From NCBI RefSeq assembly GCF_022045235.1, contig NW_027266264.1:73098001-73162000 (forward strand): 64,000 bases of DNA, written 5' to 3'. The DNA is from Haliotis cracherodii. Lineage: Eukaryota. Position 1 is the first letter of the stretch, and each line of letters starts with the position of its first letter. The notes below the pieces were generated by a model that was not told where the DNA came from, made no database searches, and was given only the letters and a program-made list of their open reading frames with translations. Of this stretch, positions 38,001-62,655 are shown in pieces. The translations under genes were made by a program, and so were the position numbers.

Positions 38001-38483
38001 AAAATGTTACTAGTACAAGGGAGGGACATAAAGGGAGGGGTCCTATCAAACGCCCTGCGTTCCTCTGTTTACTCTTCATGGTGTCTGTAGGGGCGGTCGG
38101 GTAGCCTAGTGGTTAAAGCGTTCGCTCGTCTCGCCGAAGACCCGGGCTCGATTCCCGACATGGGTACAATGTGTGAAGCCCATTTCTGGTGTCCCCCGCC
38201 GTGATATTGCTTGAATATTGCTAAAAGCGGCTTAAAACCATACTCACTCACTCACTCGCTCATGGTGTCTGTTTCAGCGGTCATGATATCGTGTGGAACG
38301 TCCTTGTACAGGTACAGCTCGAACGACCCCTACTGGCTTCCGCTTCCTGATTCCAACCAGTTAGATTGGTCCTACTACACAAGCGTGGCTACCATATTCA
38401 TCATGATGATTGGTTCCAGCATGCACGGGATACAGGCCTTGCTTCTGTGCTGCAGTAGGGAAAAGTCAATGCGGAAATACTAA
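35049..38483 (+). CDS. Invertebrate claudin-like tetraspan (PMP22/Claudin superfamily), gene C1
   Basis: Exons 35049-35316, 36716-36853, 38278-38483 (phase 1/1, GT-AG). TM1, W...GLW..C...GC first extracellular loop (ECL1) signature, WLP.P....LDWSY second loop, four hydrophobic segments, ends RKY*. Confidence 0.88.
35467..35726 (+). mobile_element. SINE-like family S2 copy (C1 intron 1)
   Basis: S2 consensus. Confidence 0.85.
37150..38017. repeat. 382-bp tandem duplication carrying two S2 SINE copies (37256-37507, 37638-37889) inside a ~38-bp minisatellite
   Basis: Near-identical blocks offset by 382 bp. Confidence 0.92.
38090..38258 (+). mobile_element. SINE family S1 inserted at the exon 3 acceptor of C1
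   Basis: 13-bp TSD TCATGGTGTCTGT at 38076-38088 and 38260-38272. Confidence 0.92.
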
Positions 38484-43606: not shown

Positions 43607-45614
43607 TATTTATGTTGAACACTCGTCACTTGAGCATCAGCGCGGATCCACCAAACAAGAGTCATGGGGAATCTGAGATTCAAACCCAAGTTTGTTGTGG
43701 AGAGGAAAGTGTCGTTTCAGGCCTTGTCAGCTTTTTCAGCTTTTCAGGACGAGTTGCCTCAATACATGCTTGTTTTCCAGCGGGAAGAAAATGATAAAAG
43801 GATTGTGATCCATTTGATATTTTATTGTAAACGATTTTGTCATCTTACAAAAATAGGTATGATTAGGGAAATAAAGAAATGATATATACATCGACTGGGT
43901 ATGGGGAGAAGCACGATAGGATAAACATGCAGACAGGTATATTGAAATGCTCCTTGAAATTTCAGGCTAGAAATGCTCCTCTTAAAATTCAAAGTGGCAT
44001 TATCAAATAGGGCATAATCACCATTTTCAAAAGTAATATAACATACAAAGGACAAAGACTTAACGCTAATACCTCAATCACAATGGTCATGAAGTGATAT
44101 TTACAGGAGTTGGTATTTTCTAGAAAATAGATTTCAGAGATACAATAGTTAATTTGGAAGGAGTTACTTCCCCTTATCGTACAAAGTGGATTTATTTTTA
44201 TTCGAAGTTGTATGGAAAGGTAAAAGTAAAACCATTATTCAGTACATTGATAACCTATTTCAGTGGAAACATTGTTCTTAGTTATGAAAGATGAATATTG
44301 CAACTGCTGTAAATTTGAATTAGAAAATTGAAGCACTGAGGTAAGGGGCAGATCGATTATGCTGATGGACAATAGGAATATCCTCGGCTGATTCCGGCCA
44401 GGCTTCTTCCTCCATTACCAAGTTTCACGGAATCAAACGAGTATCAACGTGATCATCACTATAACTCAGTAGGTAACCAATCAATACGTCATCCACTACG
44501 CAGGTAGTAACGATGACACTACTTTATTAGTCAGATTTCTCAGATTAAATAAATATGTAAAGATTAAAAGTGTTTTTGAACGCCAAAAAATGATAACTAG
44601 AAACAATGCTATAATCAGTGTCAAATTATTGCAGTTAAGCTATTTGTAACTAAAACTAAACTAAAACAAGGACATAATCTTTTGGAATATACAAAACATA
44701 TGGTATGTACAATGATGCATATTCTTCTATTCTGCAGCGAATGATGAGATATTATACAAATGTACAAAACGATCCACATATATATGGAAAAGCGTTATAG
44801 CCATACTATGTTAATGAAACATCATTGAGATTTCCTCCTAAGTATAGTACTCAGAGCCTTATAATTGTTATTCATATTACTGTACTTATTATTTTTCTTA
44901 TAAACATGGCCTGCAGCATTCACACAGTTTGTCAGTGACTGCTACCTTGGCAGGTGTTTTGGAGCTTAACGTACATAACTACAGCGGAAAGGTCCCTGGC
45001 AAGAGTTGCTTCCCTTTATTCATACAATACTATTGGAACTGAAAATACTTTGACTAACCAAAGCAAAATGTATCTCGCGCATCAGCGCGTAATTATATAT
45101 CCTGAGCTTCAGTTGTTTCTATAGAAGCAGACACTGAAAAACATGCTTAGCAAATGACATTGCATAAAATAGCCAGTTCAGTAAGTGCCCATCAAGGACT
45201 ACATCAAGCACAATAAGGTAAAATCTGCAAAACCCAAAAATATATATTCGAACCTACATATTTACCAACCTGTGTTTTGTTGAAAGAGCTGCCTCTATAG
45301 GTGATATGATTTCAAAGGCCCTGATATAAGATCATGATTAGATCACGAATAACCATCAAAATATAGAAAACGATTAATTATTTCATTTCCATGAGCATTT
45401 AAGTCCTGGATGATTTCACTGATTTCTCAAGGTGACAGAAATCTGTAATCTGGTGCCAGAGTGTTGATTGGCTAATTTGTTACACTCTAAACGGCAGACC
45501 ACAATGAGGTGGCGGGAGGGTATTGTCACATATATCTCCATCCACAGTTCTTATTGTCAACGTCTGCTGGTTCAGTTCATGTCGTCTGCTCCTGCAGTTG
45601 TGTCGTCTGCTTCT

Positions 45615-48600
45615 TTAGTATCTTGTAGCGGGCTTGGACGTGAGAGACATGTTCTGTCTTCGGGCCCTGTTGTTGTCTTCCTGGTTCAGTCTCATCCACT
45701 CGACCAGCAGACACATTCCACCAAAGAGGGCGAAAAACGCAGATAGGACGGCAAAACCAAACGACCAGGAGAGGAAGTTTGAATCGGGGTGAGGCAGCCA
45801 TTGGCGGTCAGTATCAGCCTTGATACCGAACGTAATAACACTGACGCCGATAAACGCACCTGAAAAAGATCAAGATTATTATTGCATATTCCGGAAGATT
45901 AAGACAAATATTGACTTCTATTCGTGTACATGTTTTACGGCCATGCTTTGCCTTTGTGATATGTTATTGACATCAAAGAGGTTGAATACTATATTTCGTG
46001 GCTGTCATACAAACCTCGTTCTGTCAATCTACATATTTTTATATTATAAGCATCGTGAGTATACAGGTCATTATGAATTTTAACATAAATAACGGAAATT
46101 TGCTTTGAGTATTTTCATCAAATACCTATTCGGATACCATGACCCTGAAACCAACACCAGAGTCATTGTTGCTTTGTTAAATGTTTATGACAGACAGGGC
46201 ACAGTGACTCTGCAGGTGTGAAGGAGGGGACGTTCCTGGCTGGCTACTAAGCGTGAGGTTGTGAGGTGAAATGGGGTTTAACGTCGCGTCCAAGATTATT
46301 ACACTTATAAAGCGATGTGCATGCACGTGTGTGTGGCTGCTTGTACTAGTCCGGACTGATGCCGATTTGTAGTGCTAGCTCACTGAGACACCATGCCGCA
46401 GTTTAACATGAATACCCCACTCAGACACAGTATACTGACTCCGAGCCGACCAGTCCTTGTTTTAGTCCCTTAATGCCGAGCGCCAGACAGGGTAACCAAA
46501 CAAGTACCATCTTTTAACAATCAGCAGAGTTAAATGTGTAGAATATTCTCTTTCATTCCCACCAACTCCGTGTATCGATGGCCATAGGATGGGTTTGGTT
46601 TCCTTGCAGCAACATCCCGACGGAATTTATGGGTGGGCTTCTCAAATTATCACCATGTGTGAATTCGAACCTGGCTCTTGAGTGACGTGAACTACCCACC
46701 TGCTGTGAAGTTGAGGATGTAGCTGAACATGACGTATCGTTTCTCCTTGTTTGCCGGGCAGCACTTGACGAAGTACATGATGACGAAGACAAGACACACC
46801 ATCATTATTATCAGCGTAAGCACCATCAGCACTTGGATGACAAGGAGCCATGCTGAAACAGAAGAGCCGGTGAATACTCGCGTCCACATACGAGGGAACC
46901 TCGCTTGACTTGAAAACAAACATATTTACACGTAAATACAAATTATATGAATGCAGCAGAATATTAGTTAGGAATTTCTACATACTCGTGTCTCGAACAA
47001 AGGAAATGCATAATGGGTTCGATTCTCAAAGAGAACGTAGGGCGAAGATGCCTGTAACTCAAACATTTAAGCATAGACTTACGACAGTCGTAGCACTAAG
47101 ATAGCTTTGTTTGTAGTTGTTTAAGGCCGCACTCAACAATAGTACAGCTATATGAAGGCGATCTGTAAATGATCGAGTCTGGACCAGACAATCAACTGAT
47201 TGACATCAGGAGCATCGATCAACGCAATTGGGATCGATGACATGCATCAACCAAGTCAGCGAGCCTGACCACCCTATCCCGTTAGTCGCCTTTTACAGCA
47301 AGCATGGGTTGCTGAAGACCCGGTCTTGCGTATCAAACTTTAAGGAGACCAAGCGTCAAGGACTGAATGTTATGCAAACGGTAAGCTCTTCTGTGGAATA
47401 GACGCTTTAAATTAGTATGTTGTGTCAGCTTTGCATATACGAAACACCAAATCCTCATTTTAATTCCATTCTAGCAAAAGGGTTTACGAGTATCCATACC
47501 TAGAGTATAATGCACATTGAAAATACCAACATGGAATCGTGACTATACGAATCTTGCGACCAAAAACCTCTGGTTCGTGTTCAGTGTCACCATGGTCCAA
47601 TGATATCACATTATTCACAGCATACAGCGCCAGCCATGCTTGACTCATACAAAGTCAACATGGTTTCCCATATGTGGGTCACCAGGCGATGTTGTACATG
47701 TTCAGGTTTAATGCTGTGTTCAGTGACACACAATTTGAGAGACCGAAAGCATTTCCACAGTCCGTATAATTGAGATAAAATGGGTTTTTCAAGATTATTG
47801 CACTGATAATCCATCGACGTGCATTCACCTACGTGGCTGCTTGTGCTAGTTCGGACTAATGCCGATTATATAGTGCTCGCCCACTGAGATACTTTCTTGC
47901 AGTTTAACATGAATACCCCACTCAGACAGTATACTAATTTCGAGACGACCGCTCCTTGTTTTAACCCCTTAGTGCCGAGTGCCAGACAGGGTAACAACAA
48001 GTACCATCTAATAACGTCTTTTGGTATGACGCGACCGAACAACCGCTATCCGGGCTGACGCCCTACCGCTAGACCACGGAGGCGGTCCAGTTCGCATAGA
48101 GACAAGTATGGAAACAGAAGTCATCTTGACATGCTCCAAATCTCAATATAAATATCTGAGTATTCCAGTTATATCACGACGTGTCAGCTTAATGTATGGG
48201 GGAGGCTTGAAGTGAAGCAGGACTCAAATGTTTACCACTTCGGTGAAACCCACGACACATAACCAGGGCGAACCGGTATTCGAACCCACAATCATAGGTT
48301 TCTGGCGTGCCCAAGCGATGGGGGAGGGGTTATGTCTCTAACCTTAATTATATTCTAATTCTACACTGAAATTTTTTAACTGGATCCAGTTTGTAACTGA
48401 TGACTGGTAGAGCCAGCCATTGTTTCGGTCGGTTTATGGATTTTCATCCCCAACATTCAGGTGGGTAGGTGGAAAAAAAACCATTCCAATTTCAAATAGA
48501 TACATCATAAATAGTTGCGTTTTGAGGTTTCAAATTTTCAACAGGTTATAATAATAATATTTTAAATAATTTATTTACATGGATAGAGGCAGTAAGTTAG

Positions 48601-50014
48601 ACTTTTTAAACGGTTTAATTACTACTTACTTGAGGTTGGAGGAATATAACAAACACTGCTTTCCAATTTATTTATTCACATTTCAAATATTTGAGTCGGG
48701 GATTCGTAAACAAAGTTTAAAAAAAGTCTTACCATGAGAGAATGTGTATTTATTCAATCTGTACGTGTTACACCCCATAGTTGCAGTCTGGTTCTTTAGT
48801 ATCTACCAAGAATATTCAGATGTAGTTTCTAACTAAATTGTGCTCCTGACGCATCGAAAAAATTAAACTTCGGATCTGTGTAAGTAAAATCTCTGGTGTC
48901 GTAACAGGCTCCACATGGGGCTTTATCACAATCCATCACGAAGCTCTAAAGTTTTAACTTTGAACCTTTTTTGTTTATTTTGAATATAAAAACGTGACAC
49001 GAAAGTGTCCAATGTAATCTACAACACAAATATATAAACAGACGCAGGCATCGCTTCCCATTTGACATTTAACACCCACTTGTAAAATAAACACCTCAGA
49101 GGAAAACAACTGTTTAGCGGTTCCTTGTAACCAGAGCGAGGCTAATTATTTAATACAAGGTGCCGTTATAGCCATATAATACCCGAGCCAGCGTGCTACA
49201 TTTCAGGTGATATTATAGATTGAATATATACAGAACGACATCGATAAAATAAACAATTGAAAAGTTTCAAAGCCTATTTTAAAACAAAATAATTTTGTTT
49301 AACAAAATATCATATGTTAATAATCAAGAGTATAACGCGCTCCTGTTATAACCAAATATATTATGAATTATCATTCCTTTTCGTGGAATTCCTCAAATCT
49401 AAAACCGGAAATGACTTTCACTATGTAGTCGATATTTTCAACATGATTCAGGTGTGGAGTATTTTGGAACAAACACACGTGATACATCTATATACATATG
49501 TGTGTCTAAAACTAACAATTTTAAAACATATCAGCTGGAAACTATCAAAAATTTATTCACAGGTTCCTCTTGACACCAACTGTAAGCATCGCCATTTTGT
49601 TTATATTGTTGTACCTGTGACGTCACGTATCTTACCTGTGCCGTTATGCATCAAAGAAAGACACATCAGGTGTGATCAAAAGGGTGGAGAAAAAACAAAC
49701 TATAAGTGTACTGAGCACACGTATACTGTTGTCAGAATGTAACGCTTACTCGGATTTAGCCATTCGAATATACTCCTGTATTCGAACGACATCAGGCTGT
49801 GGCAACCATTGTATCGCTTCCCGAGACTGTCTTTCTCGTTGACATAGTTGTTAAAACACGCCTCCCATATTCCCAACTTTCCGAAACCTGTCCTTCTTTC
49901 CTGTAAGGCTTCTAACCAGTTCGGTGTACACATGGACACGATCAAAAACAGAAGTGCTAGACTTGTTAGTACTAATCCACATATCGCTATTTTCGTCCGA
50001 CCCCGAGACGCCAT
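45615..50014 (-). CDS. Invertebrate claudin-like tetraspan, gene C2 (proximal first exon 1b)
   Basis: Exons 50014-49750, 46852-46700, 45859-45615 (phase 1/1, GT-AG). PNW...GIWEACF...YNGC ECL1; WLLVIQVLMVL TM2; RQWLPHPDSNFLSWSFGFAVLS second loop/TM4; ends TRY*. Confidence 0.9.
46254..46518 (-). mobile_element. S4 SINE, 5'-truncated
   Basis: Reverse complement of 11900-12156. Confidence 0.8.
47105..47320 (-). mobile_element. SINE-like family S2 copy
   Basis: S2 consensus. Confidence 0.8.
47820..48087 (-). mobile_element. S4 SINE copy
   Basis: Similar to 11816-12156. Confidence 0.78.
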
Positions 50015-51419
50015 CTTGATTAGTTCAAACCTGATGGCGACAACCTACCTGGGCGAATCCACTGCTTTTTAGGGGTGCTCAGGTGTGACTCAGCAGCTAT
50101 GTCGATATATTGCTCATTGCGACTGTGCGGTTGTAAATCTGACTTGGTGAATGTTCTATTATACTTACACATATCGACCTGTGCTTATACTAGAAATAAT
50201 CCTGGTAAACGTTTGTTCGTTAGTCGCCCCTAAACAACCATCAGCTAAACATACAAACACGTGCTATTCCATGATATGCACTTCCACAGCTGCCCATAGA
50301 GCGAAATCGACACGGGAATTTTTTTTCACATTTACTTTGTATTATTTGTAATTAACATACATTGCCTGCATTGGAACGGTGCATATTAACAGTATTTCCA
50401 CTTAAATAACCCCAATTGCGTGGATCGATGCTCATGTTGTCAATCACTGGATTGTCTGGTCCAGACTCGATCATTTACAGACCGCCGTCATATAGCTGTA
50501 ATATTGCTGAGTGCGGCGTTAAACAACAAACAGACAAACGACCTTAAATGACACGCGAACACGCGTACTGCCTCTCATGAGGCTTATTCACAAAAGGATA
50601 TAATCTTTCGAACAGGGCAAATTGAAAATCGGTGATTTTCTTTAAGAGAGTTATATTTTCTCTAAAAGGAGTAGGCGAACACTTTTATTGCTGTTACAAC
50701 ACATTATTGTAGGACATCCTACATCATTTACAACGTTAAGGACTGTCTACTCCTGCTCAATTACTTTAACGCCTTACGAAAAATTTGGCCCATTTTTATT
50801 ATCGCTTCTTAGTCCCCAATGAATGAGTAGAGTTTTACGCCGCTTTTAGCAATATCACGGGCTTCACACATTGTAACCATATTGGAAATCGAACCCAGGC
50901 CTTTCGATTTAACCACTAGGCTACCCTACCTTCCTTGTTAGCTACCAGCTCTACAGAGCATGTCCTAGATATATGGCCTGGGTCTCAGCTTTATGCATAC
51001 AAAATCATTAATCCTGGAAAGCATCGTAAAATATAAGTCTGTATACATCCGCATTCGAACCACAAGTTCCGAAATTTACTTCCAGTTACTAATCCATATA
51101 TAATCCAAACACGTTTACACTCATTTTGTTAACATACGACGAAGGGATAACTGTTTACTTGGAAGAGGCTTGGTGTACAGTATTGCCACCGTTATCAGAT
51201 TGGGTAGAGTATGCACAAGTGGATTTTGAACACCCATTCGAACGCCAACTCAGACGGGATCCCCAACAGGCCAGCCAAAGTTACACGTTCTGCAACTGCT
51301 GTGAGCTTGTCTCGTGATAATCGTTTGTATCAGTATTTACCAAAACACGTGCTCCAATTGGGTTTTTTAAATGAGTACATTTTTTACCTGGTTATCTTTG
51401 TCAGTGATATACGTTTCTT

Positions 51420-51625
51420 GCTTAACGCCATAATGACCAATATTTCAGCTGAACCAGACACTCCAGTGATTGAGATCATGAGCATCGATCCACGCAATTG
51501 GGATTGATGGCATGCTTCAACAAATTCAGCGAGTCTGACCACCCGATCCAGTTTGTCGCCTTTTCAACGCAAAGTATTTCGCATGGGTTGCTGAAGAGCT
51601 ATTCTACCACGGATCTTCACGGGTC
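51420..51625 (-). mobile_element. SINE-like family S2, diverged copy
   Basis: Ends at GATCTTCACGGGTC. Confidence 0.75.
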
Positions 51626-52631
51626 CTATCATGACGTCGACTCAAAAACTATCTGTACATCAAGGGAGCAACCACTGCATGCATTAGATACAAGCAAGGT
51701 AGAGAATTATACAATCAATACTAAAAGAAAATTATGATTGTGATCTTATATTTTTCCAAGACTAAAACAAAGAGAGTATCACGAGTCACAAACAGCCTGG
51801 CTTCCTTAACTGTTGCGGTAAGTTGGTTTGTAACACTTTATGAAGAGCAGCTCTCTGTTGATGCTCACGTAATGCCATAAATACATTTCTGTATACACTG
51901 ATGCAAAGGTTCTTCATTGTAAATAGCGTTTCGCGTCAGGTAGAAGCTGCTGCCCGAGCGCGCCATCACGTCAGGTCTGTTTCTTCAGTCAGCGGGAACA
52001 CCTGGATGTCACCACGGAATACTCCCGGTGTTTGCAGTGGAAAGTTTACATGCAAACAAGTGAATGGCAAAAGGCGAAGATGTCACAGACAATTATACCA
52101 TGCTTCACAAACTGCTCAGGAACGACGGATAGTGTTAGTTATTCTTTGCACTCTATAATGGTGGAGTGTTACTGATGCCGATTGCCCTCAGACTTCACTG
52201 TGTGTAACTTGTCGCCAGTTTCCAGATCGTGAATCATAACCATGTCTGACTATGGCAACGTTTTAATTGTGAATATAAAGATTTCTATGTTAGGTTGGAA
52301 AAATGAGATTCTATCGCCATATAGGCGGCCTAGGAGCATTAGAAGCGTGTCGCGTTGAACATGTCCACATGTCCACGATCAGTGTACAGTGAGTGAGTTT
52401 GGTTTAACACAACTTTGAACAGTATTTCAGTTACATCACGTATCAGGTTAATATGGGGTGGAAGCCCAGGTGATGCAGCTGTTTGACATAAACCCTTACT
52501 TATAAATAACCAACAAACAGTTACACTGTTATCAACGTCAGCAAAACTATCATAGAAGTAATAATTTAAGCGTTTTACAACAGGTTCTAAAGCAATGTAA
52601 GATGCCCCGCAGACCCACAACTTAGATGAGG

Positions 52632-52908
52632 CCTGTGAGGGGTTAAAATTGGTCTTCAGTAACCCATGCTTGTCTTTAAAGGCAATTATGCTTGTGGTAA
52701 GAGGCGACTATTCTTGCCATAAGAATCGACTATAAGGATGGGATCGGGTGGTCAGGCTCAGTAACTTGGTTGATGCTTGTCATCGTATCCCAATTGCGTG
52801 GATCGATGCTCATGATGTCAATCACTGGATTGTCTGGTCCAGACACAATTATTTAGAGACCACAACCATATAGCTGGAATACTGCCGAGTGCCGCATTGA
52901 ACAAACAA
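52632..52908 (+). mobile_element. SINE-like family S2, diverged copy
   Basis: S2 body and tail. Confidence 0.75.
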
Positions 52909-53784
52909 AATTTAGATCTACCTCCATGCCTATTGTGAACCTCACACACCTTTTAATTGTTATAGTCATTTCTCTCAACAAAATTCAAAAGGGTTTGTCA
53001 TGTTTGATTCCACATTTATGGAAGTAGTGATGGGCATTTTAACCACTGGCATGAAATCAAAGGGTTTGACCCCTTAATTGACATGAGGACACACTTCCTC
53101 AACCACTCAAAATTGGTTCAGACATTTAGGGACTTGCAATAAAAAAGTCTAGTTTATATAGTGGAGAATAGTCTACACTAATCTATGTCCCTTAGACATT
53201 AGAGTTCAGGATATGCATAACTGGGACAGCCTCCTTCTTGTGTTATAATTGTTTATTAATATACTACTCAAAAAAGTTAAAGAACCCCAATTCTTTCATG
53301 TTACAATAGTTAATAGGTCATGCCATGACAGATGAACTATGGTAATATGAAGAACAGTGTTAGTATACATTGTATATAGAACTGAGTTGTAGATCCCCTC
53401 TGCATGTTCAGGCAGCCTGGAAACTATACAAAGAACTGTATTTGCATTGAACTCAGTTGTGACTTCTGATGTTCTGGTCTAACCAGGCTTTTGTGAACGT
53501 CTGCAGCGTAAGCTTGCTAATAAACCACAGGAATCCCCAATTATTCTGTTTCTGTTAAAACTGATTATAATTTTGAAAACAAAGGTCCATCATCCCCCTG
53601 GACATTTCTTGTCTGAAAAGGTTCACAGTTTCCCCCTTGGGAATTTTGGAAGACTACCTCTTGTATGGAGAGTCTGGGTGATCATAAGTCCCCCGCATCT
53701 CTTTCCTCTGAGGGACATTCCAGTACATGCTGGGCACCAGCACTCCTCAATCTGAGGATTCTGAGGGATGTTAAGTGTCCAGTA

Positions 53785-54046
53785 GTTGGTTGGTTGGGTT
53801 AACGCTGCACTCCGCAATATTCCAGCTATATGATGGCAGTCTGTCAATAATCGCGTCTGGACCAGACAATCCAGTGATTAATATCATGAGCATCGATCCA
53901 CGCAAGTGGGATCGATGACATGCATCAACCAAGTCAGCGAGTCTGACCACCCGATCCCATTAGTCGCCTCTTACAACAAGCATTGTGGCCTTTTACACCA
54001 AGCATGGGTTGCTGAAGACCTATTCTACCCAGGATCTTCAGGGGTC
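53785..54046 (-). mobile_element. SINE-like family S2 inserted into the terminal unit of the 50/51-bp minisatellite
   Basis: Repeat-unit sequence on both sides. Confidence 0.85.
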
Positions 54047-55281
54047 TAAGTCCCCAGCACATCTTGCTGGTCTCCCTGTAGGGATTCTGAGGGATATTAA
54101 GTGCCCAGTACATCTTGCTGGTCTCCCTGTGGGGATTCTGAGGGATGGTAAGTGCCCAGTACATCTTGCTGGTCTCCCTGTGGGGATTCTGAGGGATGGT
54201 AAGTGCCCAGTACATCTTGCTGGTCTCCCTGTGGGGATTCTGAGGGATATTAAGTGCCCAGTACATCTTGCTGGTCTCCCTGTGGGGATTCTGAGGGATG
54301 GTAAGTGCTCAGTACATCTTGCTGGTCTCCCTGTGGGGATTCTGAGGGATGGTAAGTGCCCAGTACATCTTGCTGGTCTCCCTGTGGGGATTCTGAGGGA
54401 TGGTAAGTGCCCAGTACATCTTGCTGGTCTCCCTGTGGGGATTCTGAGGGATGGTAAGTGCCCAGTACATCTTGCTGGTCTCCCTGTGGGGATTCTGAGG
54501 GATGTAAGTCCCCAGTACATCTTGCTGGTCTCCCTGTGGGGATTCTGAGGGATGGTAAGTGCCCAGTACATCTTGCTGGTCTCCCTGTGGGGATTCTGAG
54601 GGATATTAAGTGCCCAGTACATCTTGCTGGTCTCCCTGTGGGGATTCTGAGGGATGGTAAGTGCCCAGTACATCTTGCTGGTCTCCCTGTGGGGATTCTG
54701 AGGGATGTAAGTCCCCAGTACATCTTGCTGGTCTCCCTGTGGGGATTCTGAGGGATGTAAGTCCCCAGTACATCTTGCTGGTCTCCCTGTGGGGATTCTG
54801 AGGGATGTAAGTCCCCAGTACATCTTGCTAGTCTCCCTGTGGGGATTCTGAGGGATGTAAGTCCCCAGTACATCTTGCTGGTCTCCCTGTGGGGATTCTG
54901 AGGGATGTAAGTCCCCAGTACATCTTGCTGGTCTCCCTGTGGGGATTCTGAGAGATGTAAGTGCCCAGTACATCTTGCTGGTCTCCCTGTGGGGATTCTG
55001 AGGGATGTAAGTCCCCAGTACATCTTGCTGGTCTCCCTGTGGGGATTCTGAGGGATGTAAGTCCCCAGTACATCTTGCTGGTCTCCCTGTGGGGATTCTG
55101 AGGGATGTAAGTCCCCAGTACATCTTGCTGGTCTCCCTGTGGGGATTCTGAGGGATGTAAGTCCCCAGTACATCTTGCTGGTCTCCCTGTGGGGATTCTG
55201 AGGGATGTAAGTGCCCAGTACATCTTGCTGGTCTCCTGTTGGGGATTCTGGGGGATGTCAAGTGCCCAGTACATCTTGCTC
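54047..55281. repeat. Minisatellite, 50/51-bp unit CCCAGTACATCTTGCTGGTCTCCCTGTGGGGATTCTGAGGGAT(G)GTAAGT(G/C)
   Basis: About 24 units; the 443/307/187-aa ORFs are artefacts. Confidence 0.97.
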
Positions 55282-56287
55282 CGTGGCCGACTAGATGAGG
55301 ACTGGAGGTGAATGTGTCACTAGGCTCATTCTGTTCGAACTTACCAAGACCACGGGGGTTGTTGTTCATGCTATCATCCTTTAGTGTGCCTGACAGGCCA
55401 GGCTAGTGTCTCATTCACTCACTCACTCTCTCTCGATCATCATTCAGTTAGTTATGGAAACTGAAGACAAAACAACTAGCATGCATATTTGTAGCAATCT
55501 GCCTTGACTTGTGATGCCTTTTGATTTAAACAATTGTCATGTTGTACAAGCTTCTCATCAATTAGTAAAGGGTACACTATCTCAAGAAGCCATAAGCAAT
55601 TTAAGGTTTATATGTATGTGAAAGAAGCATCCACATATACTTATCATCATATTATCAAACAATCGGACTCAAATCATTCAGCATGGGACTCCTCGCATGC
55701 TTAATTGGCATGCTTGGGGGTCATCATATTACACATGCCAAAAGCATTAAAACTTGGTTGCAAATTACTTGAAATTTGGAAATATTCTTTAGGTATGACA
55801 CTCAATCACAGTCCTAAGACCAATCCTACGGCCAACCTAACTCCCTTTTGTGGTGATTGAGTATAGTTTTATGCCGCTTTAGCAATATTCCAGCAATACC
55901 ACAGCGGGAACACAAGAAATGGCTTCACACGTTGTACCTATGTGGGGAACGACCCTGCATAACCACAATGCTTACCCCACCGAACCACATTTAGCCTACT
56001 GTTAGATGCATGTGTTGTCAAATAGTAACAAGACAATGTCCGAAAGTAAAGGGAGCGCCGCGACATGGTATTCACTTCATGCTACTCATCGATCTGTCAA
56101 ATGGTTTCATCAACGTGAAAATATCTCATGACATTTTTTAAATAGTTTCAAAACACAAGTAAACTTATATACACGGGTGCTAAATTCCCTACTTCCGGTT
56201 CGCCATGTTATTTTTACCTGTGCCTCTCACCTGACATAAACAAACACCTGTAATTACCCCCAGCGTTAGGTAGATAGATATACTTAC

Positions 56288-56585
56288 GTGGGTTCAACCA
56301 GGACCACACTGGGCGATATTCAAACGAGAATATCCACCAGCAACCGTTGTACTTCTTGCCGAGATAGTCCTTGTAATAGCTCCACTGCTTGAAACATACT
56401 TCCCACAGTCCCATCTTCACAAACTGGCGTTCGGTGTACTTGTTAAAATGCTCGATCCAGTTTGGGCTGGAGAAGCCGATCATGAAACAGACAAATGTGA
56501 TGACTGTGAATATCAGCCCGAACAACGACACCAGGGATTTAACCCTGTGTGTCGCTGATTTCTTCGCCTTGTCTTCGTCCGCCAT
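56288..56585 (-). CDS. Claudin-like first coding exon (TM1 + ECL1); probable distal alternative exon 1a of gene C2
   Basis: CAAAATGGCG start; MADEDKAKK...SPNWIEH...MGLWEVCF...KDYLGKKYNGCWWIFSFEYRPVWSWLNP; phase-1 GTAAGT donor at 56287 joins in frame to exon 46852-46700. Confidence 0.85.
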
Positions 56586-56837
56586 TTTGGTTGACGCTTG
56601 GTAGGAATTTCAAAGCGGTGACACTAATCAAGGTGAGGGGAAGAGTCGATTGCCCGCAATAGGGGTGTCAAGGTAAAGGTGTTTCAAGTTTACTGTTCAG
56701 ATCAACAGCGACGGGACAGTTCATGTGTGGTAGGCAAGCGGGTTATCACCTGTTGAATATGAAAATATGAGACCATTTTAACTTTCATGGGTTTTTTTAT
56801 TACTAAATAATATAAGTGTACTTTTTAAGTATCCCGA

Positions 56838-58058
56838 ATGTATATGGGTCCAGTGTTTCAGTAATATCTCTGTATATATGGGTCCAGTGTTTCAGTAATA
56901 TCTCTATGGGTCCAGTGTTTCAGTAATATCTCTATGGGTCCAGTGTTTCAGGAATATCTCTGTATATATGGGTCCAGTGTTTCAGTAATATCTCTATGGG
57001 TCCAGTGTTTCAGTAATATCTCTATGGGTCCAGTGTTTCAGTAATATCTCAATGTGTATAGGTCCAGTGTTTCAGTAATGTATCTATGGGTCCAGTGTTT
57101 CAGGAATATCTCAATGTATATAGGTCCAGTGTTTCAGTAATATCTCAATGTATATAGGTCCAGTGTTTCAGGAATATCTCAATGTATATAGGTCCAGTGT
57201 TTCAGGAATATCTCAATGTATATAGGTCCAGTGTTTCAGTAATATCTCTGTGTATATGGGTCCAGTGTTTCAGTAATATCTCAATGTATGTAGGTCCAGT
57301 GTGTCAGTAATATCTCAATGTATATGGATCCAATGTTTCAGTAATATCTCTATGCGCCAAGTGTGTCAGTAATATCTCAGTGTATAGGGGTCCAGTGTGT
57401 CAGTGATATCTCTATGGGTCCAGTGTGTCAGTAATATCTCTGTGTATAGGGGTCCAGTGTTGGGTCCAGTGCGTCAGTAATATCTCAACGTATATGGATC
57501 TAGTGTATCAGTAATATCTAAACATATATGGATCTAGTTTTTCAGTAATATCTCAATGTATATGGGTCCAGTGTGTCAGTAATATCTCTATGGGTCCAGT
57601 GTTTCAGTAACATCTCTATGTATATGGATCCAATGTTTCAGTAATATCTCAACGTATATGGATCTAGTGTATCAGTAATATCTCAACATATATCTAGTGT
57701 TTCAGTAATATCTCATTGTATATGGGTTCAGTGTGTCAGTGATATCTCTATGGGTCCAATGTTTCAGTTATATCTCGATTGGTCCAGTGTGTGTCAGTGA
57801 TATCTCTGTGGGTCCAGTGTGTCAGTAATATCTCTATGTATATGGATCCAATGTTTCAGTGATATCTCTATGGGTCCAGTGTTTCAGTAATATCTCATTG
57901 TATATGGGTCCAGTGTGTCAGTGATATCTCTATGGGTCCAGTGTGTCAGTAATATCCTTCATTGTATATGGGTCCAGTGTGTCAGTGATATCTCTATGGG
58001 TCCAGTGTATCAGTGATATCTCTGTGTATATGGGTCCAGTGTTTCAGTAATATCTATA
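56838..58058. repeat. Minisatellite, 28-34-bp unit GGGTCCAGTGTTTCAGTAATATCTC(TAT/AATGTATAT), between divergent claudin starts
   Basis: Directly visible. Confidence 0.95.
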
Positions 58059-58506
58059 TCGTGCTGCATGGACCTGTGATTAATTACATTGAGAGACGAT
58101 GACATAATCAAGTCGTCAACTGTAGTATATATGGAACCAAATAATATTATTATTGCAGATGTGGATCGGACAAAGCCTGTTTATGGCCGACATGCGACAA
58201 CGCAACGCGCGGTTGTAAAGATTGTAAATGCTACATATGGACTGAATGAGGTCATCCGCGATTAGCAATGCAAATGGAATGTGTCCTAAAGACAACTATT
58301 AAAAACGGCAACCATTACAACATTTTTACCACCATATGAAATATTACACGAAAACATAATTCACAGTTGAATACACTCCACTGCGACAATCAAGTTTGTA
58401 TCTATTTTACCAGTTCACGAGGATAAGACCTGTCATACAGATTAGAATGTGACACCCCCGCGCACCTGTCGCAGTAGACTCGTCCAGGTGAGACACACTC
58501 GCCAAG

Positions 58507-61500
58507 ATGGCGACTCAAACGCTTTTCAAAGTTGGCTTCTTCTGTGCTATTACAGCCTTCCTGTTGATGTTTCTGGCCTTTGCTACACCATATTGGTACA
58601 AATCATGGACCCGTGTTCACAGTCCGTTCTCCAACATCGGGTTATGGCACGTTTGTCTTGCAGGGTACATCCAGCCCAAGGACCCCAACATGAAGTCCTA
58701 TGTCGGCTGTTGGTGGATCCACTCCTCCGAGTTCAGCCAAGTCGCTAATCAAATTCAACCATGTAAGTATTCTTACAGTTATAACGACATATATGTTTAT
58801 TCGTGTAACACTAATCGGCGATCTTCATGATTACACCTGTAATCAACAGATAAAGGCATTTTCACAATGTTTACCTGTGCAGGTAACTTCCGGTTTTGAA
58901 GTTAGTGACACTGATTATCATGATTATAGTATGTCCGTGAAATACAGCGGGCCCAATGTTGATAATTAAACATCTAAGATATATTGGGGTAGTACTTGTA
59001 CGGCATGCCGTAATTAATATAAATTAGCATGAAAAGCCTGCCAGTCAAAGGGATACTTTTAGGCGATCATGCTGTAGGCTCATGTTATCAACCACTGCTT
59101 GGTTTGTCTAGACAGAACATGTTTTTTATAGCCTACTGGTGATCATGGTGATAGCTTCAATCTTGATTACTGGCATAAACCAACATAAACCAACACACAC
59201 TCACTCAATAACTATAACCTCAATCGACCGTTTCTGTTTAGTTTGTTGTTTAACGCCGCAGTCACCAATATTCCAGCTATATGATGGCGGTCTGTATATA
59301 ATCGAACTTGGGCAAGACAATCCTGTGATTGACATCACGAGCATTGATCAACGCAATTGGGATAAGATGACATTCACCCGATCCCATTAGTTGCCTCTTT
59401 CGGCAAGCATAATCGCCCTTTAAGGCAAGCATGAGTTGCTGAAGACTTATTCCACCCCAGATCTTCACGGGTTTGACCGCCTCCATGGTCTAGTGGTAGA
59501 GTGTCCACCCAGTGAGCAGAATGTCCTGGATTTGATCATACCAAAAGACGTTAAAATCTGGTACTCGTTGTTACCCTGCCTGGCGCACAGCCTTAAGGGG
59601 CAAAAAAAAGGACTGGTCAGTTTTGAGTCAGTGTACTGAGTGGGGTATTCATGTTAAACTGTGGCAAGGTATTTCAGTGGGCTAGGAATAAAAAATTGGC
59701 ATTAGTCAGAACTAACACAAGCAGCCACACAAACACACATATAAGTTCAATACGCAACGCAACATTAAACCCCATTTTACCTCACCTATGTCATGTATGT
59801 CAATCTCTGGATTGTCTGGTCCAGACTCAATTATTTATAGACCACCGTCATATAGCTGGAATATTGCTGAGTGCGGCATTAAACAACAAACATACAAATA
59901 TAACCTTTCTCTTCATAACGGACTGGTAATTCAACTTACATACAGGGGGTGGTGGGGTAGCCCTGTAGTCAAAGCGTTAGCTGGTCACACCGAAGACTCG
60001 GATTTGATTCCCTAAATGGGTAGAATCCCAATTCGGGTGTTCCCCACCATGATATTGCTGTAATATTGCTAAACGAGACGTAAACCTTTTGACCTATACT
60101 CACTCACTCACTCACTCACTCACTCGCTCACCCTCCATGAGCAGTCCCTAAGTAAAAGAAAAGTTTTGTTTTATTAAAATGGATTTGTTCCTGTAGCATA
60201 TTCACACATGTGTAGTTTACAAAGTTGGGACGCTGAACACAACTGGTACTGCATACAGGAATTTGGTGTACTTTTAACAAAGAAGTCTTATGATGGCTTT
60301 CTTCTCCTACCTTGCAGCATGGTTTCGTGGAATCCAAGCTCTGTCCATCTTCACACTGGTAGCAGACCTGGTGGGAGGCCTCCTGCTGTTGTTTTACCTG
60401 CCGGACATCATGTACAAGAAGTTGTACGCCGGACGCAGAGTGAGCATCCTCTTTGCTGGAAGCATCATGGAGTTAATTGCAGGTATACACCACTCTTACT
60501 AACTACCTGTGTTTTCGTATCAGGTCTTTGAAAGGCATTTAGAAGTGATTCACAAAAGGAAGAGAATATATGGATGTCAACTTCTTTATTATGAGGAACA
60601 CAACTTTTCGGAGTATATGCTTACTCCTTTATCATAAAGCCCCCGTTACACTATAAAGAACTTTCATAATAAAGAAGTTGACATCCATATATTCTCTTCC
60701 CTTACTGTGTTTTGTCTAAACAAGGCTCAATAGTCTATAAGCATTTCATTTGCTATGGGTGGCACTGGTGGCCCAATCATCTAAGGTGCTACAATTTGCT
60801 GTGCTGAGTTGTGTCCCTTAGGATTCAAGTAACCTAAGATTATGGGTCCAATCCCAGATTTACCTTAGTAATGATTCTTGGTTTCCAGTTCTATATCAAC
60901 CTAAACGTCTAAGGCTTACTTCACTTTGAGCTTTCGTTCCCCATCAAGCAGATGTCCATGATGGGGAAAGAAAGCTCAAAGTGATGTAAGCCTTGCAGAT
61001 GTCCTTGAGACCTGTGAAGATCCGGGGTAGAATAGGTCTTCAGCAACCCATGCTTGCAATAAAAAGCGACTATGCTTGTTGTAAGAGGCAAGGATTGGGT
61101 AGAATAGGTCTTCAGCAACCCATGCTTGCAATAAAAAGCGACTATGCTTGTTGTAAGAGGCAAGGATTGGGTGGTCAGGTTCGCTGACTTGGTTGATGCA
61201 TGTCATCGTATCCGAATTGTGTGGGCTGATGCTCATTATGTCAATCACTGGATTGTCTGGTCCAGGCTCTGTTATTTACAGACTGCCGTCATGTAGCTGG
61301 AATAATGGTGAGTGCAGTGTTAAACAGCAAACAAAATAAACCAAAAGATGTCCATGATATACTGGTAACTGAAATACTGTTCACAGCAGTGTTAAACATC
61401 TCACTCAGTATGAAAGGTTTCCTCCCTTTGCTGTGTCGCAATCCGCCGATTGCCATCAAACATCAGCATGTAATTAGAACTTTAAAGTCTGATGACAATT

Positions 61501-62655
61501 GCAAAGTTAACTCAACAACTCTCAGAGGTGCCAACCGTTATGATTTGGGTGGAATCATTATGATCAAGTATGTGATATACGTTATGAATTTTGAAACCAT
61601 TGCCAGTAATTTACACCAGTTTTACCACGCTACTGCATTGTCATAATTATATCGTACTGAAAGAGGAATCAGGCCTATTCCCCCTTGTGTCTTTGCAATC
61701 TCTGAACCAAGGAGAAGGTGAACATGCTAGGGCATGACATGTTTTATAATGCCAGAAACTCTACATTGTGGGAATGGTACACTTTACATTATTGCAATAC
61801 TTTTGCATAGTCAAGATGCCACCAATAGACACCCATAGGTCTCATCTAACAATCTCCCATTGCAGCATTTCTGGTGTTCCTCATCGCCCCCAATAGACAC
61901 CCATAGGTCTTATTTAACAATCTCCCATTGCAGCATTTCTGGTGTTCCTCATCGCCCCCAATAGACACCAATAGGTCTTATTTAACAATCTCCCATTGCA
62001 GCATTTCTGGTGTTCCTCATCGCCTCCAATAGACACTCATAGGTCTGATATAACAATCTCCCATTGCAGCATTTCTGGTGTTCCTCATCGCCTCCAATAG
62101 ACACTCATAGGTCTGATTTAACAATCTCCCATTGCAGCATTTCTGATGTTCCTCATCGCATCCAATAGACACCCATAGGTCTGATCTAAGATCTCCCATT
62201 GCAGCATTTCTGATGTTCCTCATCGCGTCCAATAGACACCCATAGGTCTGATCTAAGATCTCCCATTGCAGCATTTCTGATGTTCCTCATCGCGTCCAAT
62301 AGACACCCATAGGTCTGATCTAACAATCTCCCATTGCAGCATTTCTGGTGTTCCTCATCGACTCCAATAGACACCCATAGGTCTGATATAATGATCTCCC
62401 ATTGCAGCATTTCTGGTGTTCCTCATCGCCCTGGTGTTTGCGGAGATGTCCAATGACCCGACCTGGATGCCGAGACCGTGGATGAACTACCTGTCCTGGA
62501 GCTACGGTCTGTGTGTCCTGTCCGGCTTCTTTTCCGCCTTCGCTGGCATGTTCACCTTCATCATGGGCCTCATCTTCAGGGACAAGGAGCGCGGCATCAT
62601 CGGCAGCGACACACTGGACACTCGACTGGAGAAGATGAAGCAGAAGGAGATCGAG
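58507..62655 (+). CDS. Invertebrate claudin-like tetraspan, gene C3 (3' end probably in a further exon)
   Basis: Exons 58507-58762, 60318-60482, 62408-62655 (phase 1/1). TPYW...IGLWHVCL...YVGCWW; WFRGIQAL; WMPRPWMNYLSWSYGLCVLSGFF; probable donor GAG|GTATGG at 62656, otherwise the frame reads on to a stop at 62760. Confidence 0.88.
59232..59473 (-). mobile_element. SINE-like family S2 copy, back-to-back with an S4 copy
   Basis: S2 consensus. Confidence 0.8.
59475..59787 (+). mobile_element. S4 SINE copy
   Basis: GACCGCCTCCATGGTCTAGTGG head and Meta-like domain. Confidence 0.78.
59945..60126 (+). mobile_element. SINE family S1, diverged copy
   Basis: S1 layout with (CACT)n tail. Confidence 0.75.
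60558..60700. repeat. Perfect 37-bp inverted repeat enclosing a degenerate hammerhead-like core; probable Penelope pLTR remnant
   Basis: 60558-60594 is the exact reverse complement of 60664-60700. Confidence 0.8.
61009..61342 (+). mobile_element. SINE-like family S2 with internal ~72-bp duplication of the head
   Basis: TSD AGATGTCC(T/A)TGA. Confidence 0.85.
61820..62430 (+). repeat. 67/68-bp tandem repeat whose unit is the intron 2/exon 3 junction of claudin C3 (9 acceptor copies)
   Basis: TCTCCCATTGCAG|CATTTCTG(G/A)TGTTCCTCATCG with TGCAG at 61861, 61929, 61997, 62065, 62133, 62200, 62267, 62335 and 62403. Confidence 0.95.

What the first reader, a model, noticed from the sequence alone, without database searches (positions are those of the whole stretch)
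45615..56585. Claudin with two alternative first exons swapping the selectivity loop (invertebrate parallel to CLDN10a/b and CLDN18.1/18.2)
Seen: two intact paralogous first exons on the - strand, 56585-56288 and 50014-49750. Each has its own ATG context, TM1 and complete ECL1 (shared KD.LGK.YNGC...SFEYR....WLNP) and a phase-1 GTAAG donor, but only one set of exons 2-3 follows (46852-46700, 45859-45615). Reading 50100-56280 I found only SINEs, a minisatellite and no TM2-TM4 exon. Both first exons join exon 2 in frame. By my count the loops differ in net charge (about +3 versus 0) and in the residues after the second Cys (CWWIF versus CHSLM). Known: ECL1 sets paracellular ion selectivity and adhesion in vertebrate claudins, and CLDN10 and CLDN18 switch ECL1 through alternative promoters. 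Inference: a convergent variable-exon/constant-exon system for tissue-specific tuning of septate junction permeability.
Basis: partly seen in the sequence, partly recalled or inferred. Interest (0 to 1): 0.82.

Follow-up and report, generated by a model that had tools for sequence, protein, structure and literature searches.

The report
Abalone claudin-like gene, two first exons
An abalone gene for a claudin-like four-pass membrane protein has two alternative first exons spliced to the same downstream exons, as in human CLDN10 and CLDN18; public annotation already lists both isoforms and their function is untested.

Summary
On the minus strand, exon 1A (56585-56288) and exon 1B (50014-49750) are intact paralogous first exons with about 40% identity. 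Each has its own ATG and a phase-1 GT donor. Only one exon 2 (46852-46700) and one exon 3 (45859-45615) follow. A family profile finds no other exon 2 or 3 between the two first exons (best 3 bits, against 50-140 bits for the real exons).

RNA-like public contigs join 49750 to 46852 in two runs. In one run a contig runs from exon 2 straight into the last 30 bases of exon 1A. A DNA-like run shows no such joints.

The two predicted products match, letter for letter, RefSeq isoforms X1 (231 aa) and X2 (220 aa) of "uncharacterized protein LOC124118486" of Haliotis rufescens and H. cracherodii. The same isoform pair is annotated in H. rubra and H. asinina, so the arrangement is real but already in public annotation.

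The protein belongs to Pfam Claudin_2 and has a confident claudin/TARP fold. It fails the classical-claudin profile. The fold cannot tell a junction claudin from a receptor auxiliary subunit, so a role in septate-junction permeability remains inference.

New here: the snail Gigantopelta carries the two first-exon types as two complete genes, so the split predates abalones.

The parts
56288..56585 (-). Alternative first exon 1A (coding part). It encodes the ATG, a 17-residue cytoplasmic tail, TM1 and the whole first extracellular loop (strands beta1-beta4 and a short helix). It ends in phase 1, with GT at 56287-56286.
   Evidence: Translation and sequence. The X3 contig that overlaps exon 2 continues with letters identical to 56288-56317. 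It equals residues 1-99 of RefSeq isoform X1, P0168. Profile score 139.9 bits.
49750..50014 (-). Alternative first exon 1B (coding part). It has its own ATG, a short tail, TM1 and the first extracellular loop. It ends in phase 1, with GT at 49749-49748.
   Evidence: The joint 46852-49750 (minus-strand GT..AG) appears in runs X2 and X3. It equals residues 1-88 of RefSeq isoform X2, P0170. Profile score 123.2 bits.
46700..46852 (-). Constant exon 2: TM2, the short cytoplasmic loop and the start of TM3.
   Evidence: It is joined to exon 3 in X2 and X3, and to 1B and 1A. Profile score 50 bits.
45615..45859 (-). Constant exon 3, coding part: the rest of TM3, the second extracellular loop (beta5), TM4 and the C-terminal tail ending -TRY. 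The stop codon is at 45617-45615.
   Evidence: The joint 45856/46697 (cut +3) appears in X2 and X3. Profile score 100 bits. It is the only copy in the genome.
43800..45614 (-). Probable 3' untranslated region, about 1.8 kb. The 3' end is inferred.
   Evidence: RNA-like contigs of 2033 and 2121 letters run about 1.4-1.5 kb past 45300 (table 8). An AATAAA lies at 43826-43821.
50015..56287 (-). Intron between 1A and 1B, which also holds the presumed 1B promoter region. It contains repeats and a 50-bp minisatellite (54040-55280) and no family exon.

Best explanation
This is one gene for a tetraspan protein of the PMP22/EMP/MP20/claudin superfamily (Pfam Claudin_2). It lies in an abalone genome identical at this locus to Haliotis rufescens and H. 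cracherodii.

Shown: two paralogous first exons, 1A and 1B, each carry a start codon. Each encodes the N-terminal tail, TM1 and the entire first extracellular loop. Each is spliced to the same exon 2 and exon 3. The products are 231 aa and 220 aa and are identical from TM2 onward.

Inferred: each first exon has its own promoter, because 1B carries its own ATG and no contig joins 1A to 1B. Choice of promoter would then decide the isoform, and the ratio appears to differ between samples.

Inferred from the family only (my odds about 0.4-0.5): the protein sits at lateral cell contacts such as septate junctions. Exchanging TM1 plus the beta-sheet head (net loop charge +3 versus 0) would change what the extracellular face binds or which ions pass.

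Evolution: the A/B split of the first exon is old. The neomphaline snail Gigantopelta has an A-type and a B-type as two complete genes. Abalones either lost one constant-exon set, or Gigantopelta duplicated a two-first-exon gene. The data do not decide which.
For: - **Exon anatomy and frames:**
- **No other exon 2 or 3:**
- **Splicing:** the exon 3/exon 2 joint appears in X2 and X3. The exon 2/1B joint has depth 221 in X2 and 418 in X3. An X3 contig has a loose end of at least 255 letters at 46852, and its first 30 letters equal window 56288-56317. The DNA-like run X19 has even depth of about 25 and no such joints.
- **Annotation:** RefSeq X1 and X2 proteins of H. rufescens and H. cracherodii hold the window's exon peptides letter for letter. 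X1/X2 pairs also exist in H. rubra and H. asinina, with identical constant parts.
- **Constraint:** within Haliotis both first exons diverge about as fast as the constant part. 1A differs at 2-7%, 1B at 1-9% and the constant part at 5-8%. Both are intact in all four species.
- **Family and fold:** Pfam Claudin_2 scores 62.8 and 71.5 bits against a cutoff of 29.1. The invariant residues are W, G, W, C, G and C. The AF2 models have pLDDT 89.5, with four helices and a five-strand sheet. Foldseek gives claudin-15, -19, -4, -9 and -3 and TARPs at about 1e-6.
- **Age of the split:** Haliotis 1B groups with the Gigantopelta B-type at 99/97 support. 1A falls with the gastropod A-type clade.
Against: - The 1A junction was seen in the listed output for one run only; further rows were cut off.
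- The runs are labelled 'RNA?' by guess, although exon-only depth and the GT..AG joints argue for RNA.
- Contigs cannot show transcription starts, so two promoters are inferred.
- Contig depths are a poor measure of isoform ratio.
- Nothing here locates the protein at a junction or measures permeability.
- The fold matches AMPA-receptor auxiliary subunits as well as it matches claudins.
- The classical claudin profile PF00822 is not met.
Confidence: 0.88

Rival explanations
1. The structure is the same (two alternative first exons), but the protein is not a junction or barrier claudin. It would be a claudin-fold auxiliary subunit or adhesion-unrelated tetraspan, like TARP gamma, GSG1L, LHFPL/GARLH or TMEM47. 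The exon swap would then change which receptor or partner the extracellular head and TM1 engage.
For: The Foldseek top hits are TARP gamma-8 and gamma-2, GARLH4 and GSG1L, at the same E-values as claudins. The only weak PDB sequence hits are TARP gamma-2, at E about 0.8. PF00822 is not met, and there is a weak L_HMGIC_fpl hit. TM1 is the most divergent segment between 1A and 1B. The Atlas neighbours include LHFPL and TMEM47 clusters.
Against: The nearest Atlas clusters are arthropod Claudin_2 proteins (0.96) and the 'pickel' (megatrachea) cluster (0.94). The W-GLW-C-C loop signature is invariant. The protein lacks the long cytoplasmic tail of TARPs.
Confidence: 0.3
2. Exon 1A is not part of this gene. 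It would be the relic of, or the first exon of, a separate upstream tandem paralogue whose exons 2-3 are lost, unassembled or unrecognised. The X1 isoform would then be a gene-prediction artefact.
For: The family lies in tandem arrays, and the window has two more paralogues. Public gene models elsewhere do merge neighbours, for example the Liolophura and Owenia models. Gigantopelta has two complete genes.
Against: An RNA-like contig joins the last base of 1A directly to the first base of exon 2. No exon 2 or 3 lies between 1A and 1B, and none lies elsewhere in the genome. 1A is intact and conserved (2-7% change) in four species.
Confidence: 0.03
3. Only one isoform is functional. The other junction would be splicing or promoter noise from a decaying duplicate exon.
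For: In run X1 the 1B exon is seen only in an unspliced contig at depth 19, against 505 for exon 2.
Against: 1B-joined contigs reach about 29-48% of the exon 2-3 contig depth in X3 and X2. Both exons keep open frames, the W-GLW-C-C residues and the donor site. They change no faster than the constant exons across Haliotis. The B type has been kept since before the split from Gigantopelta.
Confidence: 0.05

Closest known systems
Vertebrate CLDN10 (claudin-10a/10b) and CLDN18 (18.1/18.2)
   Same: One gene carries two alternative first exons encoding the N-terminus, TM1 and the first extracellular loop, joined to common downstream exons. In CLDN10 the two isoforms have opposite charge selectivity and different tissue distribution (PMC7642450). 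CLDN18.1 and 18.2 arise from alternative promoters (PMC13650739). Here the two loops likewise differ in net charge (+3 versus 0).
   Different: This is not a classical claudin. PF00822 is not met, 17 residues separate the two loop Cys, and the C-terminus ends -RY. The first exon here covers all of ECL1 up to the start of TM2. No selectivity, tissue or promoter data exist. The relation to the vertebrate cases (convergent, or a shared old intron position) is untested.
Arthropod septate-junction claudins (Megatrachea/pickel, Sinuous, Kune-kune)
   Same: They are invertebrate members of the same superfamily. The 'pickel' cluster is among the nearest language-model neighbours (0.94). Sinuous is required for septate junction organisation (PMC2172325).
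   Different: Orthology was not tested and no localisation is known. I found no description of alternative TM1-ECL1 first exons for these genes.
RefSeq LOC124118486 (H. rufescens) / LOC124291041 (H. rubra), isoforms X1 and X2, 'uncharacterized protein'
   Same: These are the same gene. P0168 and P0170 equal the window's products letter for letter.
   Different: They are automatic models with no name, function or comment on the exon swap.
Gigantopelta aegis LOC121376944 (A-type) and LOC121377047 (B-type)
   Same: Their N-terminal halves are the orthologues of 1A and 1B. Support for the B pair is 99/97.
   Different: They are two separate genes, each with its own TM2-TM4, which are 40% identical to each other. 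Both are on one 47.5-Mb contig.
TARP gamma subunits / GSG1L / LHFPL (claudin-fold auxiliary subunits)
   Same: They share the fold, at Foldseek E about 2e-6 and TM-score 0.7 on the target.
   Different: Sequence identity is 14-19%. The abalone protein has no long C-terminal tail, and no receptor partner is known.

Membership tests
PMP-22/EMP/MP20/claudin superfamily (Pfam Claudin_2, PF13903) | Profile score above the curated cutoff over the full domain | tested here: met
   P0168 (window product with 1A) scores 62.8 bits. P0170 (with 1B) scores 71.5 bits. The cutoff is 29.1, and profile positions 2-192 of 192 are covered. The single exon pieces score 26-28 bits each.
PMP-22/EMP/MP20/claudin superfamily (Pfam Claudin_2, PF13903) | Four transmembrane helices with an extracellular five-strand sheet (four strands from loop 1, one from loop 2) | tested here: met
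   The AF2 models have pLDDT 89.5 and pTM 0.83-0.84, with helices and strands in that order. Foldseek hits claudin-15, -19, -4, -9 and -3 and TARPs at probability 1.00.
PMP-22/EMP/MP20/claudin superfamily (Pfam Claudin_2, PF13903) | W...GLW..C...C signature in the first extracellular loop | tested here: met
   W43, G59, W61, C64, G81 and C82 are invariant in 48 family sequences and present in both 1A and 1B.
Classical claudins (Pfam PMP22_Claudin, PF00822; tight-junction strand formers) | PF00822 profile above its cutoff | tested here: not met
   P0168 and P0170 give no PF00822 hit at E <= 0.01. The H. asinina orthologues score 18.8 bits (below) and 28.1 bits (just above) the 26.7 cutoff.
Classical claudins (Pfam PMP22_Claudin, PF00822; tight-junction strand formers) | Short spacing between the two loop cysteines (about 8-10 residues) and a C-terminal -YV PDZ-binding motif. 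Both features are from my own knowledge of the family. | tested here: not met
   17 residues lie between the Cys in both exons. The C-terminus is -ATRY.
Classical claudins (Pfam PMP22_Claudin, PF00822; tight-junction strand formers) | Forms junctional strands or a paracellular barrier or pore | not testable with these tools
   This needs expression in claudin-free cells, or localisation and knock-down in the animal.
CLDN10/CLDN18-type alternative-first-exon system | Two first exons, each with its own ATG and TM1 plus ECL1, mutually exclusively joined to one exon 2 | tested here: met
   The joint 46852-49750 appears in X2 and X3. The X3 loose end at 46852 equals 56288-56317. RefSeq X1 and X2 exist in four species. 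No contig joining 1A to 1B was listed.
CLDN10/CLDN18-type alternative-first-exon system | Separate promoters or transcription start sites | tested here: inconclusive
   The 1B contigs start 11 bases upstream of the ATG or inside the exon, with no listed loose end (table 8). Contigs cannot show starts.
CLDN10/CLDN18-type alternative-first-exon system | Tissue- or condition-specific isoform use | tested here: inconclusive
   The 1B-joined contig depth relative to the exon 2-3 contig is 221/458 in X2 and 418/1449 in X3. No spliced 1B contig was listed in X1, where an unspliced contig has depth 19 against 505 for exon 2. Depths of contigs are unreliable, and tissues are coded or unknown.
CLDN10/CLDN18-type alternative-first-exon system | Isoforms differ in ion selectivity | not testable with these tools
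   Only a charge count is available: +3 versus 0, with the difference lying between and after the two Cys.
Invertebrate septate-junction claudins (Mega/Sinu/Kune) | Orthology to, or co-localisation with, known septate-junction claudins | not tested
   The only evidence is a language-model neighbour score of 0.94 to the 'pickel' cluster, which is a lead and not a test.

The most novel reading that the evidence does not exclude
Two ancient paralogues, A-type and B-type, still separate genes in Gigantopelta, were merged in the abalone lineage into a single transcription unit. This would have happened by loss of one set of constant exons, so that the upstream gene's first exon now splices across 9.4 kb onto its neighbour's exons 2-3. 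That is a gene-fusion route to a CLDN10/18-like switch. In this reading the two isoforms also give septate junctions different charge selectivity in different tissues.
Probability: 0.15. Interest if true: 0.55.

Novelty: new member of a known kind. Interest (0 to 1): 0.3.

Why it matters
Alternative first exons that exchange TM1 and the first extracellular loop are how vertebrates make claudin-10a/10b and claudin-18.1/18.2, which have different paracellular properties. I found no published description of the same device in an invertebrate claudin-superfamily gene.

Here it is backed by spliced RNA-like contigs and by conservation across four abalone species. A sister-group snail keeps the two versions as separate genes. 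That gives a tractable pair of natural isoforms for two questions: whether septate-junction barriers are tuned the way tight junctions are, and how a variable-exon/constant-exon arrangement arises.

The weight of the finding is limited. RefSeq already lists both isoforms, and no function is known.

Tried and rejected
- **Second exon 2-3 set between 1A and 1B, or elsewhere in the genome:** searched by tblastn, by the family profile on all six frames and across the whole genome. None was found, so that reading is rejected.
- **Origin of the constant exons (A-type or B-type ancestor):** the tree of the TM2-TM4 part is unresolved. AU tests reject none of the three groupings (p 0.25, 0.43, 0.12).
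- **PDB search by sequence:** no significant hit, best E 0.24.
- **Rfam on 45000-58600:** nothing.
- **Literature:** no paper on this gene, or on alternative first exons in invertebrate claudin-like genes.
- **Other double-first-exon cases among this genome's family members:** none among the 16 scored hits.
- **Joined model:** The exons were searched one by one by reference. Full-length work used the database proteins P0168 and P0170, which contain the window's pieces letter for letter.
- **dN/dS:** not computed, because no nucleotide sequence of the first exons from other species was available. Of six differences listed for run X1 in exons 2-3, four are synonymous.


Full report
**Observation**

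- Exon 1A (56585-56288) reads as 99 codons plus one base, from an ATG to a GTAAGT donor.
- Exon 1B (50014-49750) reads as 88 codons plus one base, from an ATG to a GTAAGC donor.
- Exon 2 (46852-46700) and exon 3 (45859-45615, TAA at 45617-45615) have AG acceptors, and exon 2 has a GT donor.
- With the phase-1 junction, 1A+exon 2 gives a CCA (Pro) codon and 1B+exon 2 gives ACA (Thr). Both continue in the same frame.

The two first exons are clear paralogues: tblastn E 1e-21 at 38% identity, or 43% in a global alignment. The difference lies between and after the two cysteines.

**Only one constant set**

tblastn with the exon 2 and exon 3 peptides finds nothing on the minus strand between 50100 and 56280. 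The exon-3 peptide does detect the much more distant exon 3 of two other paralogues in the window (E 3e-10 and 7e-6), so it had power.

A profile built from 48 family members scores 140, 123, 50 and 100 bits on exons 1A, 1B, 2 and 3. It scores at most 3.2 bits on any open stretch of 50015-56287 in six frames.

In the whole 1.18-Gb assembly the exon-3 peptide has one 100% copy, and the next best copies are 42-44% identical. The interval holds a 50-bp minisatellite (54040-55280, 24.6 copies) and repeated elements. Rfam finds nothing there.

**Splicing evidence**

Public runs that hold the exons were found. Four of them were laid on 45300-51200.

Three runs (X1-X3, from three studies) behave like RNA. 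Exons stand at depth 400-1450 and unique intron stretches at 0-20. X19 behaves like DNA, with even depth of about 25 through introns and exons and no splice joints.
- In X2 and X3 one contig joins exon 3 to exon 2 (45856/46697, cut +3; CT..AC on the plus strand, which is GT..AG on the gene strand).
- In X2 and X3 another contig joins exon 2 to exon 1B (46852 to 49750, CT..AC), at depths 221 and 418.
- In X3 a further contig overlaps exon 2 and runs on for at least 255 letters that do not fit the laid stretch. Its first 30 loose letters equal window 56288-56317, the last 30 bases of exon 1A next to its donor.

The exon 2-3 contigs break exactly at 46852 in all three runs, as expected at a branch point of an assembly graph. 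The 1B-joined contigs have 48% (X2) and 29% (X3) of the depth of the exon 2-3 contig. In X1 the 1B exon appears only inside an unspliced 1297-letter contig at depth 19, against 505 for exon 2. This hints at variable isoform use. However, the tool warns that contig depths cannot rank parts of a gene, and the tissues are unknown.

**It is already annotated**

A whole-library search with the 1A peptide and a word search with a full-length relative led to named RefSeq proteins.
- P0168 is XP_046336560.1, LOC124118486 isoform X1 of Haliotis rufescens. The same sequence is XP_071109018.1 of H. cracherodii.
- P0170 is XP_046336561.1 / XP_071109042.1, isoform X2.
- P0168 contains the window's 1A, exon 2 and exon 3 peptides letter for letter at positions 0, 100 and 151. 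P0170 contains 1B, exon 2 and exon 3 at 0, 89 and 140.

H. rubra (LOC124291041 X1/X2) and H. asinina (X1/X2) have the same pair, with constant parts identical between isoforms. All are named 'uncharacterized protein'. From these identities I infer that the window is abalone DNA.

Within the genus, 1A differs at 2-7% of residues, 1B at 1-9% and the constant part at 5-8%. Both first exons are therefore conserved about as well as the rest of the protein. Of six differences listed for the more distant run X1 in exons 2-3, four are synonymous.

**What the protein is**

The full products reach 62.8 and 71.5 bits on Pfam Claudin_2 (PF13903, cutoff 29.1). They do not match the classical PMP22_Claudin profile at E <= 0.01.

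W43, G59, W61, C64, G81 and C82 (the W...GLW..C...C signature) are invariant in 48 relatives. AlphaFold models of both isoforms are confident (pLDDT 89.5). They show TM1, four strands and a short helix in loop 1, then TM2, TM3, a fifth strand and TM4.

The exon 1/exon 2 boundary falls exactly at the start of TM2. The alternative exon therefore supplies the tail, TM1 and the whole loop-1 head.

Foldseek against the PDB returns claudin-15, -19, -4, -9 and -3 at the same E-values (about 2e-6 to 1e-5) as TARP gamma-2, -5, -7 and -8, GARLH4 and GSG1L. The fold is thus claudin-like but does not say 'junction'. The language-model Atlas puts arthropod Claudin_2 clusters (0.96) and the 'pickel' cluster (0.94) nearest, followed by LHFPL and TMEM47. 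These are leads only.

Between 1A and 1B, TM1 is the least conserved segment (3 of 21 residues identical), while loop 1 is about 55% identical. The swap is therefore more than a loop swap.

**Evolution**

Other gastropods (patellogastropods, caenogastropods, heterobranchs) returned only A-type proteins, with CWWIF after the second Cys. The B type (CHSL/CHAL) was found only in Haliotis and in Gigantopelta aegis.

Gigantopelta has an A-type protein (LOC121376944) and a B-type protein (LOC121377047). Their TM2-TM4 parts are distinct (40% identical), and both are on one 47.5-Mb contig.

In a tree of the exon-1 part, Haliotis 1B groups with Gigantopelta B at 99/97. 1A falls in the gastropod A clade at 81/90. 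The A/B split therefore predates the divergence of the two lineages.

The tree of the constant part is unresolved, and AU tests reject no grouping. I cannot say whether abalones lost one constant set or Gigantopelta duplicated a two-first-exon gene.

**Comparison and verdict**

The arrangement works like CLDN10 and CLDN18. In CLDN10, isoforms differing in the first exon form anion- versus cation-selective pores and have different tissue distributions (PMC7642450). CLDN18.1 and 18.2 come from alternative promoters (PMC13650739).

Membership in the claudin superfamily is met. Membership among classical claudins is not. A septate-junction role, as for Drosophila Sinuous (PMC2172325), is an inference from family only.

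The functional reading is open. I rate it a new, undescribed member of a known kind, of modest interest.

Noticed in passing
window 58510-62592 (+): A paralogous Claudin_2 gene (call it Y) lies head-to-head with exon 1A. Its exon 1 is about 58510-58761, a possible exon 2 is about 60320-60397, and exon 3 is about 62395-62592.
   Followed up: no
window 35049-38468 (+): A third, more distant paralogue (call it X) has an exon-1-like stretch at 35049-35348 and an exon-3-like stretch at 38244-38468. The window thus holds a small tandem cluster of the family.
   Followed up: no
window 56839-58055: A tandem array of a 34/62-bp unit (about 38 or 19 copies, 76-78% matches) fills most of the 1.9 kb between the ATG of exon 1A and the divergent paralogue Y. 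It therefore sits in the presumed shared promoter region.
   Followed up: no
window 54040-55280: A very regular 50-bp minisatellite (24.6 copies, 97% matches) lies in the 1A-1B intron. It creates long spurious ORFs on both strands, up to 443 aa.
   Followed up: partly
window 46088-46678, 47073-47466, 47861-48451, 50225-50618, 50816-51012: These intron stretches have summed contig depths of 10^4-10^6 in all runs, so they are highly repeated elements (SINE-like). Many chimeric joints between them are assembly noise.
   Followed up: no
G000:C1:32032045-32034947 (-): The closest paralogue outside the window lies on the same chromosome-scale contig, 41 Mb away. Its exon 1 scores E 3e-30 and its exon 3 scores E 4e-12 against the family profile. 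It has a single first exon.
   Followed up: no
P0009 (Owenia fusiformis CAH1776236.1): This annelid gene model has two loop-1 modules in series (the second lacks TM1) before a single TM2-TM4. It looks like two alternative or tandem first exons merged by the predictor. It hints that the arrangement may recur in Lophotrochozoa.
   Followed up: partly
P0177 / P0021 (Gordionus sp. LOC135924557 X1/X2): A nematomorph family member has isoforms identical through residue 150. They then differ by a paralogous alternative last exon covering the end of TM3, loop 2 and TM4. This is the mirror image of the abalone swap.
   Followed up: partly
P0005 (Liolophura sinensis XP_064596691.1): This chiton model of 431 aa consists of two complete family proteins in series. 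It is probably two tandem genes fused by prediction.
   Followed up: no
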